A stretch of 64,000 nucleotides of DNA from Selaginella moellendorffii (lineage: Eukaryota; Plantae; Lycopodiophyta): NCBI RefSeq assembly GCF_000143415.4, contig NW_003314327.1, forward strand, positions 388,851-452,850, in the 5' to 3' direction. Below, one piece after another: positions 5,015 to 13,850 of the stretch (positions are counted from its first letter, which is position 1; each line of letters begins with the position of its first letter). Position numbers and translations under genes: made by a program. Under the pieces are notes generated by a model that saw only the letters and a program-made list of their open reading frames with translations, was not told where the DNA came from and ran no database searches.

Positions 5015-5978
5015 ATGGTGTGTCGGAAGAAGAATGTGAGCCATGGAAGTGGCGATGGCGAGGATTGGACCGAGGAGCAGGAGGCTAGGCTCCACAATGC
5101 GCACCTCGCCGTTCGAGCGACGCCGAATTTCTGGCGCGACATCGCGAAGCTTGTGAGTTCTCGCGAAATTCTGGGGATTTGATCGATCGCGTGGTTGCCA
5201 GGTTCCAGGGAAGACCGCGGACGAGTGCTTCCACAGATTCTACTCGGCCCATCCCACGCCGCCGTTGGCGCCCCAGCAGCACGGGAGGAGGGTGTGCTTG
5301 AGCTCGCCAATTCGGCCGCTTGAAGGAAAGCTTCTGTCCCCGACTAGATTGCTACACCAGAAGCAGGCGGCGAAGATTAGAAAGGTCGGCGGGAGGAGCA
5401 CGAAGGCGATCTTCCAATCGCACAAGGCTGTCCGCGAGATCCTTCGGAAGCAGCAGATCGATGACCAGGGATACGAAGAAGACGCCTTTGCTGCCCTGGA
5501 GAGCACGGACATTCCTTGCTGGGACAAAGCCGCTGCCTTGGTTTCCATCGCCACCCCTGCCGCTACCAAGAGAAAGAAATCAGCCAAGAAGAAAGAGGTG
5601 ATCAAAGCGGTGGTGGATTCTTCCAGTGAGAGGCCCAGTTCTTCGGAGGTTCTAAGGCCAGCGTCTACCGATGGGAGGAAGCACGAGAGGTATCTGGATC
5701 TCCTCATTCGCAGGAACAAACTACCGGCAGCGTCACAGAGGAAAAATGCGAAGAAAGACGATCCAAGCAGCAGTGGTGGTGGCTTTGGTTCAAAGCTCAA
5801 GGCGCGGCTTGGATCGAGCAAGAACTTGTCCACTGCCAAGTCCGCGGTGATTGCCAGCGCAAGGGACGTACTGGAACAGATACGTGAGAGAAGATCATCG
5901 TCCTCCACGGCCACAAAATTAGACAGCGATAGAGACTCGGGATCATGCTCTGACGCGAGCGACTTGGACGATTTCTAG
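5015..5978 (+). CDS. SANT/Myb-like domain protein with basic, disordered C-terminus (2 exons; intron 5153-5201)
   Basis: WTEEQEARLHNAHLAVRATPNFWRDIAKL|VPGKTADECFHRF fits the SANT pattern W...FW..IA..VPGKT..EC. A 49-nt GT-AG intron joins it in frame to ORF 5265-5978. Confidence 0.8.
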
Positions 5979-6135
5979 AGATCCATGCGTACAGGTTCGT
6001 CACCATTCTTTTTGCTTGAGCTCTTCACCAGTGATTCTCTTCTTTCAGACTTGTGATCGTTAGTAGGGGAAGTTTTTGCGACAAAGATTTTGGGACGAAA
6101 CGAATCCCATCCAAACAAAAGTGGCCGCTCTCTTT

Positions 6136-7798
6136 CTACTCGGCGGCTTTAGGAAGAACTATATCCTCCGGGCCCAGCTCCAAGTCCGTGTCGATCGTCG
6201 GCCCATACGAGTGGATCCTCTTGAAGTTCCAGTGGTCAGTCGGGAGTGGCTCCGAGAACCACGACTGGAATTCCTCGTCCCACCGCTGCTCGACCTGTCC
6301 AACCGCGAAGTAATTTATGGGAAACGTGAGCGGCGACCGAACTCCATCCGTGTGCCGTGGGATTTTCTTATCCTGCGCGCGCGAAGTTGGAACAAATCAG
6401 TCGCAACAAAGGAAAGAGACAAGAAGAAACAACGAGAGCTATACATACCAGTAAGAACGCCATCACGGTTTCTAGGAAACGATCCTCGTCCATCTTTGCG
6501 GCCTCGGGATAAATCCGTCCCATAATCACGCGGTGCCTATGCACAGGGATGCTAGAAATGTCAATAAAACAACAAGTCACAGTACCTCGTTTCCTTGTTG
6601 TCGTGAGTTACGAGTATGTCGTACATCCATCCGCCGTTTGTGACGAACTTGCTCTCGTAGTACACGTCGAATGTTATCTCTCGATCGTCGGGCGTCTTGA
6701 CGGAACAAGCCACTCGTTTCGATGATTCCTCCTCGCGGGCTTTGGCAGCAGCGGCCAGTTCCTCGGGTGTTTGATCTTTCGACTAGAGTGACTTCACAAC
6801 GTAAGCTTCTTTTTTTTTCTATGTAGAAAAGGAGAAACTTACTGGCAGGATGTCACACTTTCCCTCTGCGAGCAAGTCCGGGTTGTAGACCATCTGTTTT
6901 GCCGAATACCAACGAAAGATGAGAGAAGCTTTAAGGCGAACGCTTCTGGAGAAACTCTACCTCTTCCAGGACGCCTTTGTCGAACAAAATTTGTTTGAGC
7001 GTCTTGGCTCTATCAGCCGCCGCCGCCGCCTTCCCTCTGTCGGAAATGGATCCAGCGTCGACGGGCTGCTCCCACAGGTTTCTCTGTGTAATATCGGCGT
7101 TTCCCCTTGGAATGCTCCCAAGCTCGTTCACCCACTAGAAAAATGAAAAAAAGCGACCATCATGCATCAATCTTGTTATAGCAACTTCTAGCATACGTAC
7201 CTGTTGTCTCACAGCGAGCATTTTCTGCTGATCAAGCACCGGCAAGTGGAACACCTTGTAAAAGTGGCAAAGCTCCGGACGCCTTCCGATGAGAGTTCTA
7301 AGAGAGTTCCTGATATCCTTGGAGAAACCAATGTACTGAACCCTGTTGTTGTTGTCAATTACGGCAAAAATGGTAGCGGCAGTGTCGGGATCCACTGGTG
7401 GCTGAATTCTTCCATCCTTGTTGACATAGGGGCAGAGCGGCAGGTCTTTGAGAGGAGTGACGGCTTCCGTTGTAGCAGCCGTTGTAGAAGCTGAGAGTGC
7501 TACTACAGCAGCAATGCAGCTTGATCTGGCTCGAGACAGACCCCGCCGTGGCGCATAAATCTGCCATTTGCAAAGTGAATGGCTGGCGTTGCTACCTTGC
7601 TTCAGAAATCCCAGATGAGCAATTCTTGCCGAATCTGGAAACGATTGGAGCTGAGCTGACGTTTGCGACACAGCACCATTTTGCAGGGAGACTGAAGCCT
7701 GGTACAAGGAACAGATTAAACAGCTCCTTAAGAGAGTCTGGAAAGCTAGAGATTTTTTAGATCGAAGAACTCACCGTTGTTGCGGCAACAGCAGCCAT
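6136..7798 (-). CDS. Putative plastid-targeted GIY-YIG-like domain protein (GRXS16 N-terminal/cyanobacterial type) with unknown C-terminal domain
   Basis: ATG at 7798 (MAAVAAT|), Ser/Ala-rich transit-like region, then TIFAVIDNNNRVQYIGFSKDIRNSLRTLIGRRPELC, WVNELGSIPRGN, LWEQPVD, KGVLEE|MVYNPDLLAEGKCDIL. Further exons run to ...VLPKAAE* (stop 6136-6138). No glutaredoxin CGFS domain. Confidence 0.78.
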
Positions 7799-8702
7799 GA
7801 GCTGAGGGACAGTCGCTTTGGCCTTTTACTCATATCTTCCGGTGGAAATATCTACTTGACTTCCCTTATCAGGATAGAATAGATCTTCACCATCCACGGA
7901 TTCCGAATCAGGTATCCAGGCCGTCCAAACTAAACGTCTGTCACTCGTAGGAATCGTTCTGGAGAAAAGAGGTGAATTAGATGAATTTCTAACAAAGCTT
8001 ACTTCCAGAAGAGAAGTTTCTCAAACTCGAACCAGATAAAACGAAGGCGTGGCAATGAGAACGGGAGAACCAATCTGCAAAGCACAAAAAAGACTTTCAC
8101 CTTGACCCGAACACAAGAGCGGAGGAACGACGGTTGACACGGTCTGGCGCTCATCCTCGAGCTTAATCGTCAAGTCGGGGACAGATCATTCTAAACAAAA
8201 GCACAGTCAACCCAACGCCAAAGACATGAGCCTTGACAGCGTCAAAGCACGAGCTTGCTTTCGTTTTAAAGTACCTGGAGTGGTATAAAAAGATCGCTCG
8301 TTGTAAGAAAAGTTTCCCGTCCTCTCCTCTCCCAGCTTTGACATTTTCCTCCTGTTTCAATCAGCGGAAAATCGGATAAGTCTCGAGGAAGAAGAAAAAA
8401 ACAGACGCAGCATCGATCAACTCAGGCAAAGCGCAGCTCAAAAGTTTCGAGAGGCAATGATAGTCAACCCCACAGCCCACAAAGTACAAACAAAGGAGAA
8501 CAGTCTTGCTCCAGCGTGTTTGACAATTTTTAACGCGCGGTCTTCCGCTTAAAATTCTCCTCGACGTGTTCAAAGAGGTGTCTTGAGTGGAGTCGAGTAT
8601 CACAGCTACTATAAGTACGAGGAGAAGAAGAAAAGCTTCTCCTTGATCGTAAAGATTGGACCAGCCAAGAGCCAGCCAGCCCAATCCACGAAAAAATTCT
8701 GC

Positions 8703-9296: not shown

Positions 9297-11174
9297 ATGA
9301 CGGATGAATCCTTGCTGCCGGAGATTTCCAGCCTCGCCATCCGCGACTCTCCGGCCCGGGCCGGCGATTCCGCCTCCTCCCCACCAGATCTCGACGTGTC
9401 GGTGGCCCTGGATCACGCCGAGGCCGTGGTGCGCAAATGGGAGAATGGCACTGGCGAGCAGATGGTCTGGGAGATCTCCTCCGAGGACGCGCAGGATTAT
9501 CTCCTCGCCGTGGATAGCCTCCAAGCTCTCCTTGGCGATGGCGATGGCGGCCCCGATGCTGCCAGGATCCAGGAGGTGCTGCGAATCGCCCAGGGGCGAT
9601 TGAAGAGCGAGTTCAAGCACTTGCTCGCGATCCACACCGAGTGCGTCGACCCGAGCTGGCTGCCCGAGAGCTTCTCGGCGCCATCTTTCAGCTCCAACCC
9701 GGATCCATCCGACGAAGATGGCTCGTCAACGAATCCAGATGGTGTCTCCACCGAGCAGCAGTCGATGCGAGAGCAGAGCTTCATCATAGATCTCCTCCCG
9801 CCCGCCATCGTCGCGGACTTGAGCGACATAGCCCGGAGGATGGCCAACATGGATCACTCCCGGGACTGCATCGACGCTTACATCCTCGTCCGCAAGGGCG
9901 TCCTCGAGGACAGTATGTTCTTGCTGGGAGTGGAGAGGCTCTCGTCCGAGGACGTCCAGAAGATGGAGTGGAAGGTTTTGGAGCCGCGCATGAAGAAGTG
10001 CCTCAAGGCCATGAAGGTTTCGTTCAAGGTGCTGTTTGCGAGTGAGAGGTTTCTCTCCGACGAGGTTTTCGCCGTGGACCTCGAGGAGAGCGATACGTGC
10101 TTTGCCGAGATGGCCAACGACGCGGCGCTCGAGGTGCTCGACATGATCAGAGTGTTTGCGACGCCGGACAAGCCCGAGAAGCTGTTCCGGCTGCTGGACA
10201 TGTACGAGACGCTCAAGGAGCTGCTGCCCGAGATCGAGTTGGCGTTCCAAGGACAGGTTTGCAGTCGAGTGCGCCAAGAGGCTGCTGATGTTCTCGATAT
10301 ACTCAGTGGTGCTGCCAGGGAGACCTTCGTCGGGGTGAAGAACGCCATCGAGACGAGCTTGTCGACGCAGCCGGTTGTTAACGGAGCCGTGCATCCCCTC
10401 ACGCGGTACCTGATGAACTACCTCTCGTTTCTGTCCGAGTACATGGACACGATGAAGGAGCTCTTTGGTCACCAGGAGTCCGCGAACGGGGAGGCTGGTG
10501 TGGCTGGCGGCGACGAGACGAGCGAAGCCGCGGGTGCCGGTGAGGACGAGAACGAAGTTGGAGCTCTCCGATCGCCGCTGGTGCCGGTCTTGATGGAGAT
10601 ACTAGAGGCGCTGATGAGGCACACGGACGAGAACGCGAGGCTGTACAAGGACACGGTGCTGAGCACCATCTTCCTGATGAACAACACACACTACATCGTC
10701 CAAAAGGCCAAGCACGCTGGGATCCAGTTCGTTATCGGGGACTCTTGGCTGCGGAGGCACAGCTCGCTGGTGCGGTACCACGCCATGAACTACCAGAGGG
10801 TGGCGTGGGGGAAGATCTTCTCCTATCTCCGGGACGAGGGAATCCGGGGACCGGGATACAACATCTCCAAGGAGATACTCAAGGAGAGATTCAAGAACTT
10901 CAACGCTGCGTTTGAGGAGATCCACAGGACGCAGGCGGGATGGGTGGTGTCCGACGGCCTCCGGGACGAGCTACGCGTTCTCATCAGTGACAAGCTCATC
11001 CCGGCCTACCGATCCTTCCTCGGGAGATACAGGGTCCACCTCGAAGGCATGAGACACTCGGAGAGATATCTCAAGTACTCGGTGGAGGACTTGGAGAACC
11101 TCATCAACAATCTGTTCGTGGGAGCAGCGCATGGTTCGATGAGCAGGCGACGATCCATCACCGGTGGAGGGTGA
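9297..11174 (+). CDS. EXO70: Exocyst subunit EXO70 family protein (intronless)
   Basis: Motifs PEKLFRLLDMYE, GAVHPLTRYLMNYL, LSTIFLMNNTHYIVQK, KERFKNFNAAFEEIHRTQAGWVVSD, YLKYSVEDLENLINNLF. Confidence 0.96.
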   Translation: MTDESLLPEISSLAIRDSPARAGDSASSPPDLDVSVALDHAEAVVRKWENGTGEQMVWEISSEDAQDYLLAVDSLQALLGDGDGGPDAARIQEVLRIAQGRLKSEFKHLLAIHTECVDPSWLPESFSAPSFSSNPDPSDEDGSSTNPDGVSTEQQSMREQSFIIDLLPPAIVADLSDIARRMANMDHSRDCIDAYILVRKGVLEDSMFLLGVERLSSEDVQKMEWKVLEPRMKKCLKAMKVSFKVLFASERFLSDEVFAVDLEESDTCFAEMANDAALEVLDMIRVFATPDKPEKLFRLLDMYETLKELLPEIELAFQGQVCSRVRQEAADVLDILSGAARETFVGVKNAIETSLSTQPVVNGAVHPLTRYLMNYLSFLSEYMDTMKELFGHQESANGEAGVAGGDETSEAAGAGEDENEVGALRSPLVPVLMEILEALMRHTDENARLYKDTVLSTIFLMNNTHYIVQKAKHAGIQFVIGDSWLRRHSSLVRYHAMNYQRVAWGKIFSYLRDEGIRGPGYNISKEILKERFKNFNAAFEEIHRTQAGWVVSDGLRDELRVLISDKLIPAYRSFLGRYRVHLEGMRHSERYLKYSVEDLENLINNLFVGAAHGSMSRRRSITGGG

Positions 11175-11806
11175 GCTTGAGTACGCGCTACGATCGAAGG
11201 AAACGAGAAAGCTAAAGTACCATCGGTGCGCGAGAAAAAAGTTCCAAGAGTTGAGGGACGAAGTGGTGAGGAGGAGGATATCAAGTGGAGCGATAACGGA
11301 ACATGGATGGATTGACCAGGTTGCTTGCTACTCTCTCTCAGCTCTTTCTCTCTTTTTTTCTTACTAAGCAACGTTTTTGAGGAGCGGGGATTTGTGGCTC
11401 TTTTCTTTTTCTTTTTTTTTTCTCTCCTCTTTTTGCTCCTGTACAGATTAGCGAGCCTCCAGTGGGAAGAAGAAATTTTCTCCACCTCTGGCAGCTGGCT
11501 GCTGTTGTGCTGTTGTCTGGGACTCTTGATTTCATAATGTAATAAAGCGCTGAAAATCAAAAACATCGTTTAAGATTATTCTAAAATTTTGTCCCCTTTT
11601 TCACCTTTTGTTCAAATGTTCATGGCAACAGAGTCTAAACATTTGTGGCTCTTGGATGGATTCTTCCTCTAAAAATGGATCCACCAGTCTTTGTGAAACA
11701 TGTGGAGAGGATGATATAGCACCATGGTTTCATCAACATTACTCTCCATACTATACCTTTTGAAAATGGATGGCAGAATATATTGCTTATCTGGTATTTA
11801 AGAATG

Positions 11807-11965
11807 TTGCCAAGATGGCCAACGACGCAGCGCTCGAGGTGCTCGACATGATCAGCGTGTTTGCGACCCAGACAAGGGCCGAGAAGCTATTCCGGCTACT
11901 GGCCGAGATCGAGTTGGCGTTCCAAGGACAGGTTTGCAGTCGAGTGCGCCAAGAGGTAGCTGATG
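11807..11965 (+). pseudogene. Short duplicated fragment of the neighbouring EXO70 (source 10102-10290)
   Basis: Near-identical sequence (ATGGCCAACGACGC.GCGCTCGAGGTGCTCGACATGATCAG...GGACAGGTTTGCAGTCGAGTGCGCCAAGAG) with a ~30-bp internal deletion. Confidence 0.92.
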
Positions 11966-12127
11966 CTGTGGATCGATCTTGCCTTCGAGAGGGGACAGAG
12001 AATCGAAATATTTTACCTGGGGATGGAGGAAATGGACCCGACGCTAGATGGCAAGTTTTAAAATTGCGAGGTAGCAAAGAAAAATGTGAAGGAAAAAAAA
12101 AAAAAAAAAACTATCAAACAAATTGCC

Positions 12128-13850
12128 TCAAGGGAGTTCCTTGCAAACGGAACACAAGAAAATGCCAATATATAGCAGCACACACTGCATGAAACCAGTT
12201 GTTGCAATAATCGCAAGCTATCCAGTGACCTCTCTCAGCTGTAACTTCAGAATCCTCCTTCCGGTGACATACTCCGCAGATGTCGATCGGCCGGTAGTTC
12301 CCGCGCTTGAATTCTTCAAAAGCGTTCTAAATTCTTCAATTGGACTCGTCAACCACTATTGTGCACTTTGCTGAGCTAACTCCGTTCTGGTTACCTTCGG
12401 AAGCGTTCCCCTTGAAGCTGGATACACGATTAGAAAGGCCATGATATATCAAGTATATACTGGAGTCCCAGTGCTGCTGCGTAAGCTGAGGTTTTGGAGC
12501 TGCCTTCCTTAGTGGATAGACTTGCGTGGCTTTCGTTGACCAGTGAACAGAACAATGGTCTCAGATGCAAAGTGAAAGCGCCACATCAAGTCCGAACCAG
12601 CACCATTGTCTGCTACGAAGAGTGTACACCTGTCACAGATGTAATCCAGGCTCGTGTACTGGCTCTCAGCAATGTACACAACCACCGCCTTGTTATCCAG
12701 GTGGAGCCTTTCACAATTTCACTTGTTTCCGTCTTAAGCCTCTCCATCGTTTCCGTCAGCGTCAGTCCATCAAACAGCGCCGTGCCATCACTCCATTCTC
12801 TGCATCCCACCAGCCCCAGGGGAAGAAGAATCCTTGAGGCTGCTTAGCGCGCTATAGATCTTATGTTTAATGTCGTCCACGCTTTGCAAGTAGTTGTGCA
12901 TCGCCAAAAGCGACTGGGGCTTATCTAAAACAACCCCATCACGGCCCATGATCTCTGCCTGCAATATGTTTGTACCAAATGACAGAGCATAACACCATCC
13001 AAAGTAGAAATACTGAATCGTGGCTTGCAGAAAAACATATCGAAGCTTGTAGGGTGTTCGGCCTGCAAGCCTGTTTCACCGTCTGATAGAATGACACCCC
13101 TGGCATGCCCTCTTTTGTTGTGAGCTGACGCATCACATCCCATAGTATATCATTGGTGATGATCTTCTCCGCACGCTCGTTAACCTGTAGAATGCCACGA
13201 TTTGTGTAGCATCTGACCAACCCCCACACATGTCGTACAAAGTAAAACCTGTTCGCAGCAAATAACCTGATGCTCCCTGTTAAAGACACCTGTAAGAACC
13301 GGCTTAGCCAGTGGATAGACGCCCCCCTCTGACATGTAATCCCCCTGGGCCGGATCTGGAGATGCCCTGTGCCTAACGGGAGGGATCTCAGCCTCCCGTA
13401 AAAGCAGCTCCTCACTCAAATCGTCTAGCCGTTTAATTTCCTGTCGAAGTTGATGTTGAGAACCATCCCGTTTCCAGTGTCGTTCAAAGATACTGACAGC
13501 AAGCTTGGATGAGTAGCCAGCGATAAGGCGTTACCCCTCTGTTCTTGCAGTAGAAGAAAATCTCCAGCCGAGTCAAAAGCAGCACCGCTTTGCTACGTCT
13601 TCCACCAAGTCCTTTGAGCCCCATTCGCCACGAAAAAGAGTCCAAAGTTCCATGCATAGAGTGTCCTCGTTTTGCCTCGTCCCAATCACCATTGCAAACC
13701 GGGTGGTAGAAAGCCAAGAACTTGTCAAACGCATCGGTCCTTTGCTCATGCAAACGATGCAGGGGTCTCCTCCCAAACAATGGAACGCCATTACTGGAAT
13801 AAATCCCCCCGTAAATCGTCTAAAAATATGGATTTCTAACTTCAACTTCA
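12128..13850 (-). pseudogene. Decayed multi-exon gene ending in a PHD finger, with possible Ulp1/C48 peptidase-like remnants
   Basis: Minus strand ICGVCHRKEDSEVTAERGHWIACDYCNNWFHAVC and, after a frameshift, FLCSVCKELP*. Upstream RILLP..GLV....ALFDGL and DNGAGSD/CGAF resemble Ulp1 motifs. Several stops and frameshifts. Confidence 0.55.

What the first reader, a model, noticed from the sequence alone, without database searches (positions are those of the whole stretch)
6136..7798. Stand-alone cyanobacterial-type GIY-YIG protein with plastid-like leader and an unnamed C-terminal domain
Seen: the spliced protein has a transit-like N-terminus, a GIY-YIG-like core (TIFAV...VQYIGFSKDI...LIGRRPELC; WVNELGSIPRGN; KGVLEEMVYNPDLLAEG), then ~170 aa (FDVYYESKFVTNGGWMYDILV; HRVIMGRIYPE; FPINYFAVGQVEQRW; DHWNFKRIHSYGP) that I cannot assign. 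Known: in angiosperms this domain type is fused to a CGFS glutaredoxin in plastid GRXS16, while cyanobacteria have it as a stand-alone protein. Inference: an endosymbiont-derived nuclease-fold protein with a different partner domain, possibly limited to algae and non-seed plants and largely uncharacterised. The canonical GIY motif is degenerate (TIF), so it may bind rather than cut.
Basis: partly seen in the sequence, partly recalled or inferred. Interest (0 to 1): 0.7.

Follow-up and report, generated by a model that had tools for sequence, protein, structure and literature searches.

The report
Plastid GIY-YIG-like protein, unknown partner domain
This is a real, expressed Selaginella gene for a probably chloroplast-targeted protein that joins a nuclease-like domain (the type found on the glutaredoxin GRXS16) to a conserved domain with no known relatives, in an uncharacterised family found from green algae to conifers but in no flowering plant among the hits.

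Summary
A seven-exon gene on the minus strand (ATG 7798, TAG 6136-6138) encodes about 422 aa. Transcript contigs from four studies show all six introns exactly as modelled. It is Selaginella moellendorffii SELMODRAFT_410819; RNA does not support the N-terminal extension in the public annotation.

Orthologues follow the species tree: chlorophytes, charophytes, bryophytes, lycophytes, ferns, gymnosperms and one haptophyte. No hit is from an angiosperm or a prokaryote, so "cyanobacterial-type" is unsupported and "non-seed plants only" is wrong.

I found no paper that characterises the family. It is best described as a third architecture of the plastid GRXS16-type module, after the GRX and NFU fusions. 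Function is inferred, not shown. The scan had not noted this family before.

The parts
7775..7798 (-). Exon 1: start codon (7798-7796) and the first 8 codons, MAAVAATT. The donor GT is at 7774-7773.
   Evidence: Sequence. The 7697/7774 junction is present in contigs of 4 runs. An in-frame TAA at 7828-7826 lies upstream of the ATG within the same RNA-supported exon.
7459..7698 (-). Exon 2, first 80 codons: transit-peptide-like leader.
   Evidence: Composition is S+T 19, A 15, D+E 2, K+R 7 in 80 aa. Orthologues have poorly conserved presequences of 32-166 aa (median 87) with 3.4% D+E. No targeting predictor was run.
6780..7464 (-). N-terminal folded domain (P0001 aa 164-327): GIY-YIG-fold core plus helical extension. 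It is encoded by the rest of exon 2 (to 7201), exon 3 (7134-6961), exon 4 (6893-6843) and the first codon of exon 5.
7366..7368 (-). Codon TTT (Phe, P0001 F196) at the position of the GIY tyrosine.
   Evidence: HMMER aligns it with the Tyr of GRXS16 'GVYAV'. hhalign aligns it with the Tyr of E. coli UvrC 'GVY'. The column is F43 V4 L1 Y1 in 49 orthologues.
6720..6767 (-). Charged, Ala-rich linker helix between the two domains (model residues 173-188).
   Evidence: DSSP on the AF2 model. The alignment is variable here.
6193..6728 (-). C-terminal family-specific domain (P0001 aa 345-481): four long antiparallel strands, two helices, a short strand and a helix. It is encoded by exon 5 (to 6586), exon 6 (6536-6449) and exon 7 (from 6372).
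6136..6192 (-). Low-confidence C-terminal tail and the TAG stop (6138-6136).
   Evidence: pLDDT is below 50 for model residues 313-340. Stop codon read.
7799..8500 (-). Long spliced 5' leader: exon to 7958, intron 7959-8032, exon 8033-8190, intron 8191-8274, exon from 8275 onward. It contains an out-of-frame upstream ATG at 7833.
   Evidence: Joints 7958/8033 and 8190/8275 have CT..AC ends. The first intron is retained in run X2. Sequence.

Best explanation
Identity (about 0.95 confidence): this is an expressed nuclear gene of Selaginella moellendorffii. It encodes an organelle-targeted, most likely plastid, two-domain protein of an orthologous family that runs from green algae to gymnosperms.

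Mechanism (inferred; the confidence given refers to this part):
- The N-terminal domain is a GRXS16-N-type GIY-YIG fold. It keeps the phosphate- and metal-contacting set (YIG Tyr, Lys/Arg on helix 1, Glu, Asn) but has lost the GIY tyrosine that canonical enzymes of this superfamily need for catalysis.
- It therefore most likely acts as a binding or docking module for a plastid nucleic acid or another phosphate-bearing partner, not as an efficient endonuclease.
- The same module carries a glutaredoxin in GRXS16 and an NFU domain in algal and non-dicot NFU1. Here, through a helical linker, it carries an acidic, Cys-free domain without known relatives. That domain's invariant His, Arg, Thr, Asp and Asn residues suggest a specific ligand or protein-partner site, so it would be the family-specific effector.
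- The gene is dispensable in, and appears to have been lost from, angiosperms.
For: - Gene and splicing.
- Residue pattern: the GIY Tyr column is F43/V4/L1/Y1; the other columns are Y48 43/49, K53 42/49, R56 41 plus 5 K, R60 47/49, E96 45/49 and N104 43/49. hhalign places F37 and Y48 on the two UvrC tyrosines.
- Relaxed tyrosines in the clade: the N-domain-only paralogues keep the first Tyr but vary the second (H/F/Y), and GRXS16 has FVG for YIG. The clade as a whole has therefore relaxed the two tyrosines.
- Same module on Fe-S carriers: PMC8003979.
- In vitro nuclease activity of the GRXS16 domain has been reported, but its physiological role is still called unclear in a 2026 review, PMC13621322.
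- C-domain: a confident model, strong conservation, acidic with no conserved Cys, and no relatives found.
- Leader.
- Distribution.
Against: - No experiment of any kind exists for this family.
- The related GRXS16 domain, which also has one degenerate tyrosine, was reported to cut DNA in vitro, so loss of one Tyr may not abolish activity.
- The conserved Glu, Arg and Asn could equally indicate retained catalysis.
- Targeting rests on composition only.
- The acidic C-domain gives no positive clue to its partner.
- Pfam GIY-YIG is below threshold (best E 0.021, 4 of 29 members). hhalign to UvrC gives only 35% probability over 32 columns, so the residue equivalences beyond GRXS16 are partly inferred from motif spacing.
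Confidence: 0.4

Rival explanations
1. It is an active plastid endonuclease. The GIY-YIG domain cuts plastid DNA (repair, recombination or degradation), as reported in vitro for the GRXS16 N-terminal domain, and the C-terminal domain provides substrate choice or regulation, as in modular GIY-YIG enzymes.
For: - GIY-YIG fold.
- Glu, Asn, Arg/Lys and the YIG Tyr are conserved.
- The catalytic-domain, linker, second-domain layout is typical of I-TevI and UvrC (established knowledge).
- GRXS16 NTD nuclease activity is cited in PMC5890173.
[quoted passage not shown] Its identity with this family was not verified.
Against: - The GIY tyrosine is Phe, Val or Leu in 48 of 49 orthologues.
- The C-domain is acidic (median pI 5.4), which is unlike a DNA-binding domain.
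- The physiological relevance of the GRXS16 nuclease activity is unresolved (PMC13621322).
Confidence: 0.25
2. It is an accessory of plastid Fe-S cluster trafficking. The GRXS16-type module is a protein-docking handle shared by GRXS16, NFU1 and this family, and the C-terminal domain is a third cargo or adaptor (for example a client-specific or metal-handling factor). No nucleic acid is involved.
For: - The two characterised fusion partners of this module are both Fe-S carriers of the SUF pathway (PMC8003979; PMC5890173).
- The catalytic Tyr is relaxed across the clade.
- The C-domain is acidic with conserved His, Asp and Glu.
- Lineage-specific loss resembles that of the NFU1-type fusion, which is lost in dicots.
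Against: - This is guilt by domain association only.
- There is no conserved Cys in either domain, so it cannot itself ligate a cluster in the usual way.
- Conservation of the Glu, Arg and Asn of the nuclease site is not explained by this reading.
- The co-distribution with DPOR that I tried as a candidate client fails in Pavlova/Diacronema lutheri.
Confidence: 0.25
3. The two-domain protein is a gene-model artefact that fuses two neighbouring genes, or the locus is a pseudogene.
For: The public model of this very gene has a wrong N-terminus, which shows that annotation in this region is imperfect.
Against: - Single spliced contigs join all exons from the N-domain to the C-domain in four runs.
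- The frame is open throughout.
- About 50 orthologues from algae to conifers, many from transcriptomes, have the same architecture, and their tree follows the species tree.
Confidence: 0.02

Closest known systems
N-terminal domain of Arabidopsis glutaredoxin GRXS16 (PDB 2LWF)
   Different: - GRXS16 continues into a CGFS glutaredoxin. This protein continues into a helical extension, a linker and an unrelated domain of about 137 aa.
- GRXS16 keeps the GIY Tyr and has lost the YIG Tyr and the helix-1 arginines. This family does the reverse.
- GRXS16 is present in angiosperms. This family was not found there.
Algal and non-dicot NFU1 (CrNFU1, Cre17.g710800): GIY-YIG domain fused to an NFU domain (PMC8003979)
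   Same: [quoted passage not shown] It also has a patchy distribution with loss in a large angiosperm group.
   Different: Its partner domain is a Cys-bearing NFU Fe-S carrier. I did not retrieve an NFU1 sequence, so its similarity to this N-domain was not measured here.
N-domain-only paralogues (for example Vitrella brassicaformis A0A0G4GGJ4, Gloeochaete wittrockiana, Pyramimonas obovata; 240-300 aa)
   Same: They have the same extended N-domain, including the 'WE.P.D ... RG.KE..(R)FDP.L..G.LD' extension (E 1e-8 to 1e-6).
   Different: They have no C-terminal domain and keep the GIY Tyr as invariant. They occur in a glaucophyte, a chromerid and a prasinophyte.
Canonical GIY-YIG nucleases (UvrC N-terminal domain, I-TevI, R.Eco29kI, T4 EndoII; Pfam PF01541)
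   Different: Pfam is below threshold. The GIY Tyr is replaced by Phe. The Glu-to-Asn spacing is 4 residues shorter than in GRXS16. The second domain is acidic and unrelated to known DNA-binding modules.

Membership tests
GIY-YIG nuclease superfamily | Core alpha/beta fold (beta-beta-alpha-beta-alpha) | tested here: met
GIY-YIG nuclease superfamily | Match to Pfam PF01541 at the gathering score | tested here: not met
   The exons give no hit. Only 4 of 29 orthologues match at all, with best E 0.021.
GIY-YIG nuclease superfamily | First signature tyrosine (GIY) | tested here: not met
   The column is F43 V4 L1 Y1. It is aligned to the Tyr of GRXS16 GVY and of UvrC GVY.
GIY-YIG nuclease superfamily | Second signature tyrosine (YIG) | tested here: met
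   The column is Y43 F5 L1 within 'QYIGFSKD'. It is aligned to UvrC 'IYVGKAKD'.
GIY-YIG nuclease superfamily | Catalytic arginine on helix 1 | tested here: inconclusive
   hhalign places UvrC R42 opposite Ser58, flanked by near-invariant R56 and R60. Which of the two, if either, is equivalent cannot be decided without a structure-based superposition.
GIY-YIG nuclease superfamily | Metal-binding glutamate and the downstream asparagine | tested here: inconclusive
   E96 is present in 45/49 and N104 in 43/49, within 'W.SELG..P.GN'. These align to 'WIEE....PPGN' of GRXS16. Equivalence to UvrC Glu and Asn is by motif only, because hhalign did not extend that far.
GIY-YIG nuclease superfamily | Divalent-metal-dependent nuclease activity | not testable with these tools
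   This needs a biochemical assay.
GRXS16 (class II plastid glutaredoxin with N-terminal domain) | N-terminal GRXS16-type domain | tested here: met
   2LWF matches at E 0.0046 (single exon), 1.5e-8 and 2.8e-9 (profiles).
GRXS16 (class II plastid glutaredoxin with N-terminal domain) | C-terminal CGFS glutaredoxin domain | tested here: not met
   No glutaredoxin Pfam hit in the exons or in any of the 29 orthologues scanned, and no CGFS motif appears in the alignment.
Plastid-targeted nuclear-encoded proteins | Cleavable N-terminal transit peptide and plastid localisation | not testable with these tools
   Composition is consistent (S/T/A-rich, 2 acidic residues in 80 aa; orthologues have variable presequences with a median of 87 aa). 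No predictor or localisation data were available.
   None of the listed or named hits is prokaryotic. The scan of prokaryote genomes with the N-domain found none.

The most novel reading that the evidence does not exclude
The GRXS16-type GIY-YIG-like module is not a nuclease at all. It is a common docking handle of the plastid Fe-S (SUF) delivery network, and this family's acidic His/Asp/Glu-bearing C-terminal domain is a new fold that serves a specific client or metal-handling step. That step was lost together with its client at the base of the angiosperms. Dark-operative protochlorophyllide reductase was my first candidate client. The family's presence in Diacronema/Pavlova lutheri, which lacks chlL/N/B, argues against that particular client.
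Probability: 0.1. Interest if true: 0.75.

Novelty: new variant of a known kind. Interest (0 to 1): 0.45.

Why it matters
The GRXS16-type GIY-YIG domain is a known puzzle. It sits on two plastid Fe-S carriers, GRXS16 and NFU1, and a 2026 review still calls its physiological role unclear. This family adds a third, widely conserved architecture, and N-domain-only paralogues add a fourth. Here the same module carries a well-folded domain with no relatives.

This gives independent handles on what the module does:
- The family is single-copy in genetically tractable organisms (Marchantia, Chlamydomonas relatives).
- Its natural absence from flowering plants explains why Arabidopsis genetics never met it.
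- It carries a natural Tyr-to-Phe substitution that tests whether catalysis matters.

The work also corrects the public gene model of SELMODRAFT_410819 at its N-terminus.

Tried and rejected
- Pfam and NCBIfam on single exons gave nothing. Exons are too short and the family is not modelled.
- Searching for the C-domain on its own returned only fragments of the same family, so no free-standing C-domain was found.
- A weak sequence match of the C-domain to 'Bacterial Ig-like domain protein C0362' (E 0.09-0.26) was not backed by any fold search. I treat it as chance.
- The ESM Atlas feature searches were blank. The Atlas shape search returned the family itself plus two unnamed bacterial clusters of about 93 aa (TM 0.74-0.75 by target). 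That is a lead only, because the fold is small.
- I recalled that Pavlova keeps DPOR and tried co-distribution with DPOR. The literature says the opposite (PMC4337275), so the idea was downgraded.
- The alternative in-frame acceptor at 6551 is not used in any of the four runs.
- The metagenomic member P0235 could not be assigned to an organism from its contigs.
- PMC3677505, the GRXS16 structure paper, is not held.
Whole-protein work used the public protein P0001 and its orthologues.

Full report
**1. What is in the sequence**

Reading the minus strand between 7798 and 6136 gives a clean seven-exon gene with GT..AG introns.
- Exon 1: 7798-7775.
- Exon 2: 7698-7201.
- Exon 3: 7134-6961.
- Exon 4: 6893-6843.
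- Exon 5: 6782-6586.
- Exon 6: 6536-6449.
- Exon 7: 6372-6136, ending in TAG.

I laid contigs of four public runs from four studies on 5900-8500. They are spliced and transcript-like and come from the same coded organism. They show all six junctions at exactly these positions with minus-strand GT..AG ends. An alternative in-frame acceptor at 6551 is not used.

A library-wide HMMER search with the conserved part of exon 2 returned a 100% identical public protein, P0001 (499 aa). The word-index search names it SELMODRAFT_410819 of Selaginella moellendorffii, and UniRef calls it 'GIY-YIG domain-containing protein'. Exons 3-7 are identical to P0001, and exon 2 differs at one residue.

The first 85 or so residues of P0001 come from upstream exons whose junction into exon 2 is not seen in RNA. 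The RNA-supported exon 7774-7958 carries an in-frame TAA (7828-7826) just upstream of the ATG at 7798. It resembles orthologue starts such as MAATTSLSL in Diphasiastrum.

Exon-level queries were made by reference. Whole-protein work used P0001 and its orthologues.

**2. The N-terminal domain**

No exon hits Pfam or NCBIfam. Exon 2 alone finds the solved N-terminal domain of Arabidopsis GRXS16 (2LWF) at E 0.0046. Profiles of the family raise this to 1.5e-8 and 2.8e-9 over about 75 positions, running from the GIY strand to the 'PPGN' motif.

An AlphaFold2 model built on 49 orthologues has mean pLDDT 88.3. Its N-domain matches as follows.

| Target | Score |
|---|---|
| 2LWF (Foldseek) | E 1.2e-4, TM 0.66 by target |

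The core is therefore a GIY-YIG fold of the GRXS16 type. It is followed by a helical extension, about 164 aa in all.

Pfam's GIY-YIG model stays below threshold (4 of 29 members, best E 0.021).

Column counts over the 49 orthologues:
- The GIY tyrosine position is F43, V4, L1, Y1.
- The YIG tyrosine is kept in 43.
- K53 is kept in 42, R56 in 41 (plus 5 Lys) and R60 in 47.
- The Glu of 'W.SELG' is kept in 45 and the Asn of 'P.GN' in 43.

hhalign against the E. coli UvrC N-terminus puts the Phe and the Tyr on the two UvrC tyrosines, and UvrC R42 between R56 and R60. The probability is only 35% over 32 columns.

GRXS16 shows the complementary pattern, GVY but FVG, with no helix-1 arginines. The N-domain-only paralogues keep the first Tyr and vary the second. 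From established knowledge of GIY-YIG enzymes (UvrC, I-TevI, Eco29kI/Hpy188I), both tyrosines are normally required. The clade therefore looks catalytically relaxed, and this family in particular lacks the first one.

**3. The C-terminal domain**

After a charged linker helix comes a domain of about 137 aa. It consists of four long antiparallel strands, a short and a long helix, a loop bearing 'PR.TEG', a short strand in 'FPINYF' and a further helix. The domain folded alone gives pLDDT 86.5 and pTM 0.80.

It is strongly conserved. Gly (TNGG), His (HRV) and Thr (R.TEG) are invariant. Asp, Arg, Arg, Glu, Gly, Phe, Asn, Tyr, Phe, Trp and Tyr are near-invariant. It is acidic, with median pI 5.4 and net charge -4, and has no conserved cysteine. 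The GIY-YIG core is mildly basic.

I found no relative for it:
- No Pfam or NCBIfam hit.
- No PDB sequence hit better than E 0.09.
- Foldseek against the PDB gave nothing.
- The ESM Atlas feature searches were blank.
- The Atlas shape search returned the family's own chlorophyte cluster plus two unnamed bacterial clusters of about 93 aa (TM 0.74-0.75 by target over 87-89 residues). That is a lead without functional content.
- No free-standing C-domain protein turned up in the 78-271 aa range.

**4. Relatives and distribution**

Full-length orthologues (400-490 aa, 41-60% identity) carry names from the following groups:
- Liverworts: Marchantia, Riccia, Calypogeia.
- Moss: Sphagnum.
- Lycophyte: Diphasiastrum.
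- Ferns: Adiantum, Ceratopteris.
- Gymnosperms: Ginkgo, Taxus, Cryptomeria.
- Charophytes: Closterium, Spirogloea, Mesotaenium, Chara, Mesostigma, Chlorokybus.
- Chlorophytes: Coccomyxa, Micractinium, Pleodorina, Neomeris, Pterosperma.
- Haptophyte: Diacronema (Pavlova) lutheri, from a genome scaffold.

A quick maximum-likelihood tree of 50 members follows the species phylogeny. Seed-plant sequences form one clade with Ginkgo outermost. No unnamed clade sits where angiosperms would be (the careful search did not finish).

None of the 57 hits is an angiosperm, although the collection holds NCBI and UniRef proteomes and orthologues at 50% identity were found easily. I therefore read the family as lost in, or before, the angiosperm stem. 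This rests on protein databases, not on genome-level searches.

No hit is recognisably prokaryotic. A pattern scan of one genome per prokaryotic species found nothing, but that tool sees close relatives only. The many 55-160 aa hits are exon fragments of chlorophyte genes.

A separate, shorter family (240-300 aa) consists of the N-domain with its extension only. It occurs in the glaucophyte Gloeochaete, the chromerid Vitrella and the prasinophyte Pyramimonas.

**5. Literature**

GRXS16's N-terminal domain was reported to have endonuclease activity in vitro, negatively coupled to the GRX domain (reviewed in PMC5890173). [quoted passage not shown]

PMC8003979 notes that Chlamydomonas NFU1 and its orthologues in algae and all land plants except dicots carry a similar GIY-YIG domain fused to an NFU domain.

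I found no paper on the present architecture. [quoted passage not shown] It is chloroplast-predicted and was recovered with the chloroplast small heat-shock proteins HSP22E/F (PMC5700999). I could not check whether it is the orthologue, although the related alga Pleodorina has one.

**6. How it most likely works**

Shown:
- The gene is real, spliced and transcribed.
- Its product has a GRXS16-type GIY-YIG fold and a second, unrelated, well-conserved domain.
- The family is old, orthologous, and missing from angiosperm hits.

Inferred:
- The S/T/A-rich, acid-poor leader, with variable presequences of 32-166 aa in the orthologues, points to organelle targeting. The plastid is most likely, as for GRXS16.
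- The N-domain lacks the GIY tyrosine but keeps the basic helix, Glu and Asn. I think it binds a phosphate-bearing partner, most simply plastid nucleic acid, without efficient cleavage. It would serve as the common handle of a small group of plastid proteins whose second domains differ: GRX, NFU and this domain.
- The acidic, Cys-free C-domain is then the specific effector, with a ligand or partner-protein site formed by the invariant polar residues.

I give this 0.4. The rivals are a genuine endonuclease (0.25) and an Fe-S-trafficking accessory in which the module is a protein-docking handle (0.25). A gene-model artefact is excluded for practical purposes (0.02).

**7. A hypothesis tried and weakened**

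The distribution, present up to gymnosperms and absent in angiosperms, recalled that of the Fe-S enzyme DPOR (chlL/N/B). However, Hunsperger et al. list Pavlova lutheri, like all sequenced haptophyte plastomes, as lacking these genes (PMC4337275). A family member comes from that species. The specific DPOR link is therefore unlikely. A looser link to the Fe-S network remains as the low-probability novel reading.

**8. Verdict**

It is partly wrong or unsupported on cyanobacterial origin, on 'stand-alone' and on restriction to non-seed plants.

This is a new variant of a known kind. It is of moderate interest as an untouched and genetically tractable entry point to the unresolved role of the GRXS16-type module, and for its C-terminal domain, which has no detectable relatives.

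Noticed in passing
window 7799-8154 (minus strand): The public model SELMODRAFT_410819 (P0001) begins with about 85 residues from upstream exons (for example the ORF 7999-8154). Transcript contigs instead show exon 7774-7958 continuous into the ATG at 7798, with an in-frame TAA at 7828-7826. The annotated N-terminus is therefore probably wrong.
   Followed up: yes
window 7799-8500 (minus strand): The 5' leader is long and has two introns (7959-8032, retained in one run, and 8191-8274). An out-of-frame upstream ATG at 7833 overlaps the main start. One 4.6-kb contig runs on for a further 2.6 kb beyond 8500, towards the plus-strand EXO70-like gene at 9297-11174. This may mean overlapping divergent transcripts or an assembly merge.
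   Followed up: partly
window 6537-6551 (minus strand): A second AG acceptor lies 15 nt upstream of the one used (exon start 6551 instead of 6536). It would keep the frame and add five residues. It is not used in the four runs examined or in any orthologue.
   Followed up: yes
window 5265-6046 (plus strand): The neighbouring convergent gene ends at 5978 (…DASDLDDF*). One run shows a GT..AG joint at 5991/6046 in what would be its 3' UTR, so the two genes' 3' ends abut or overlap near 6046-6136.
   Followed up: no
window 11770-12192 (plus strand) versus 9297-11174: A short ORF repeats a stretch of the 625-aa EXO70-like ORF just upstream (…MANDAALEVLDMI.VFAT…EIELAFQGQVCSRVRQE…) with an internal gap. 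It looks like a partial duplicate or pseudogene fragment.
   Followed up: no
proteins P0117, P0122, P0124, P0126, P0129, P0147 (alignment A5): A distinct family of 240-300 aa consists of only the extended GRXS16-type N-domain. The GIY tyrosine is invariant and there is a 'SLRLHLGR.P' helix. It occurs in a glaucophyte, a chromerid and a prasinophyte, has no Pfam hit, and is uncharacterised as far as I could see.
   Followed up: partly
loci L002-L004 (metagenome contigs carrying P0235): A divergent, intronless member (447 aa) sits in gene-dense eukaryotic metagenome contigs next to a DUF6737 gene and an AAA_11/AAA_12 helicase-like gene. The organism was not identified.
   Followed up: no
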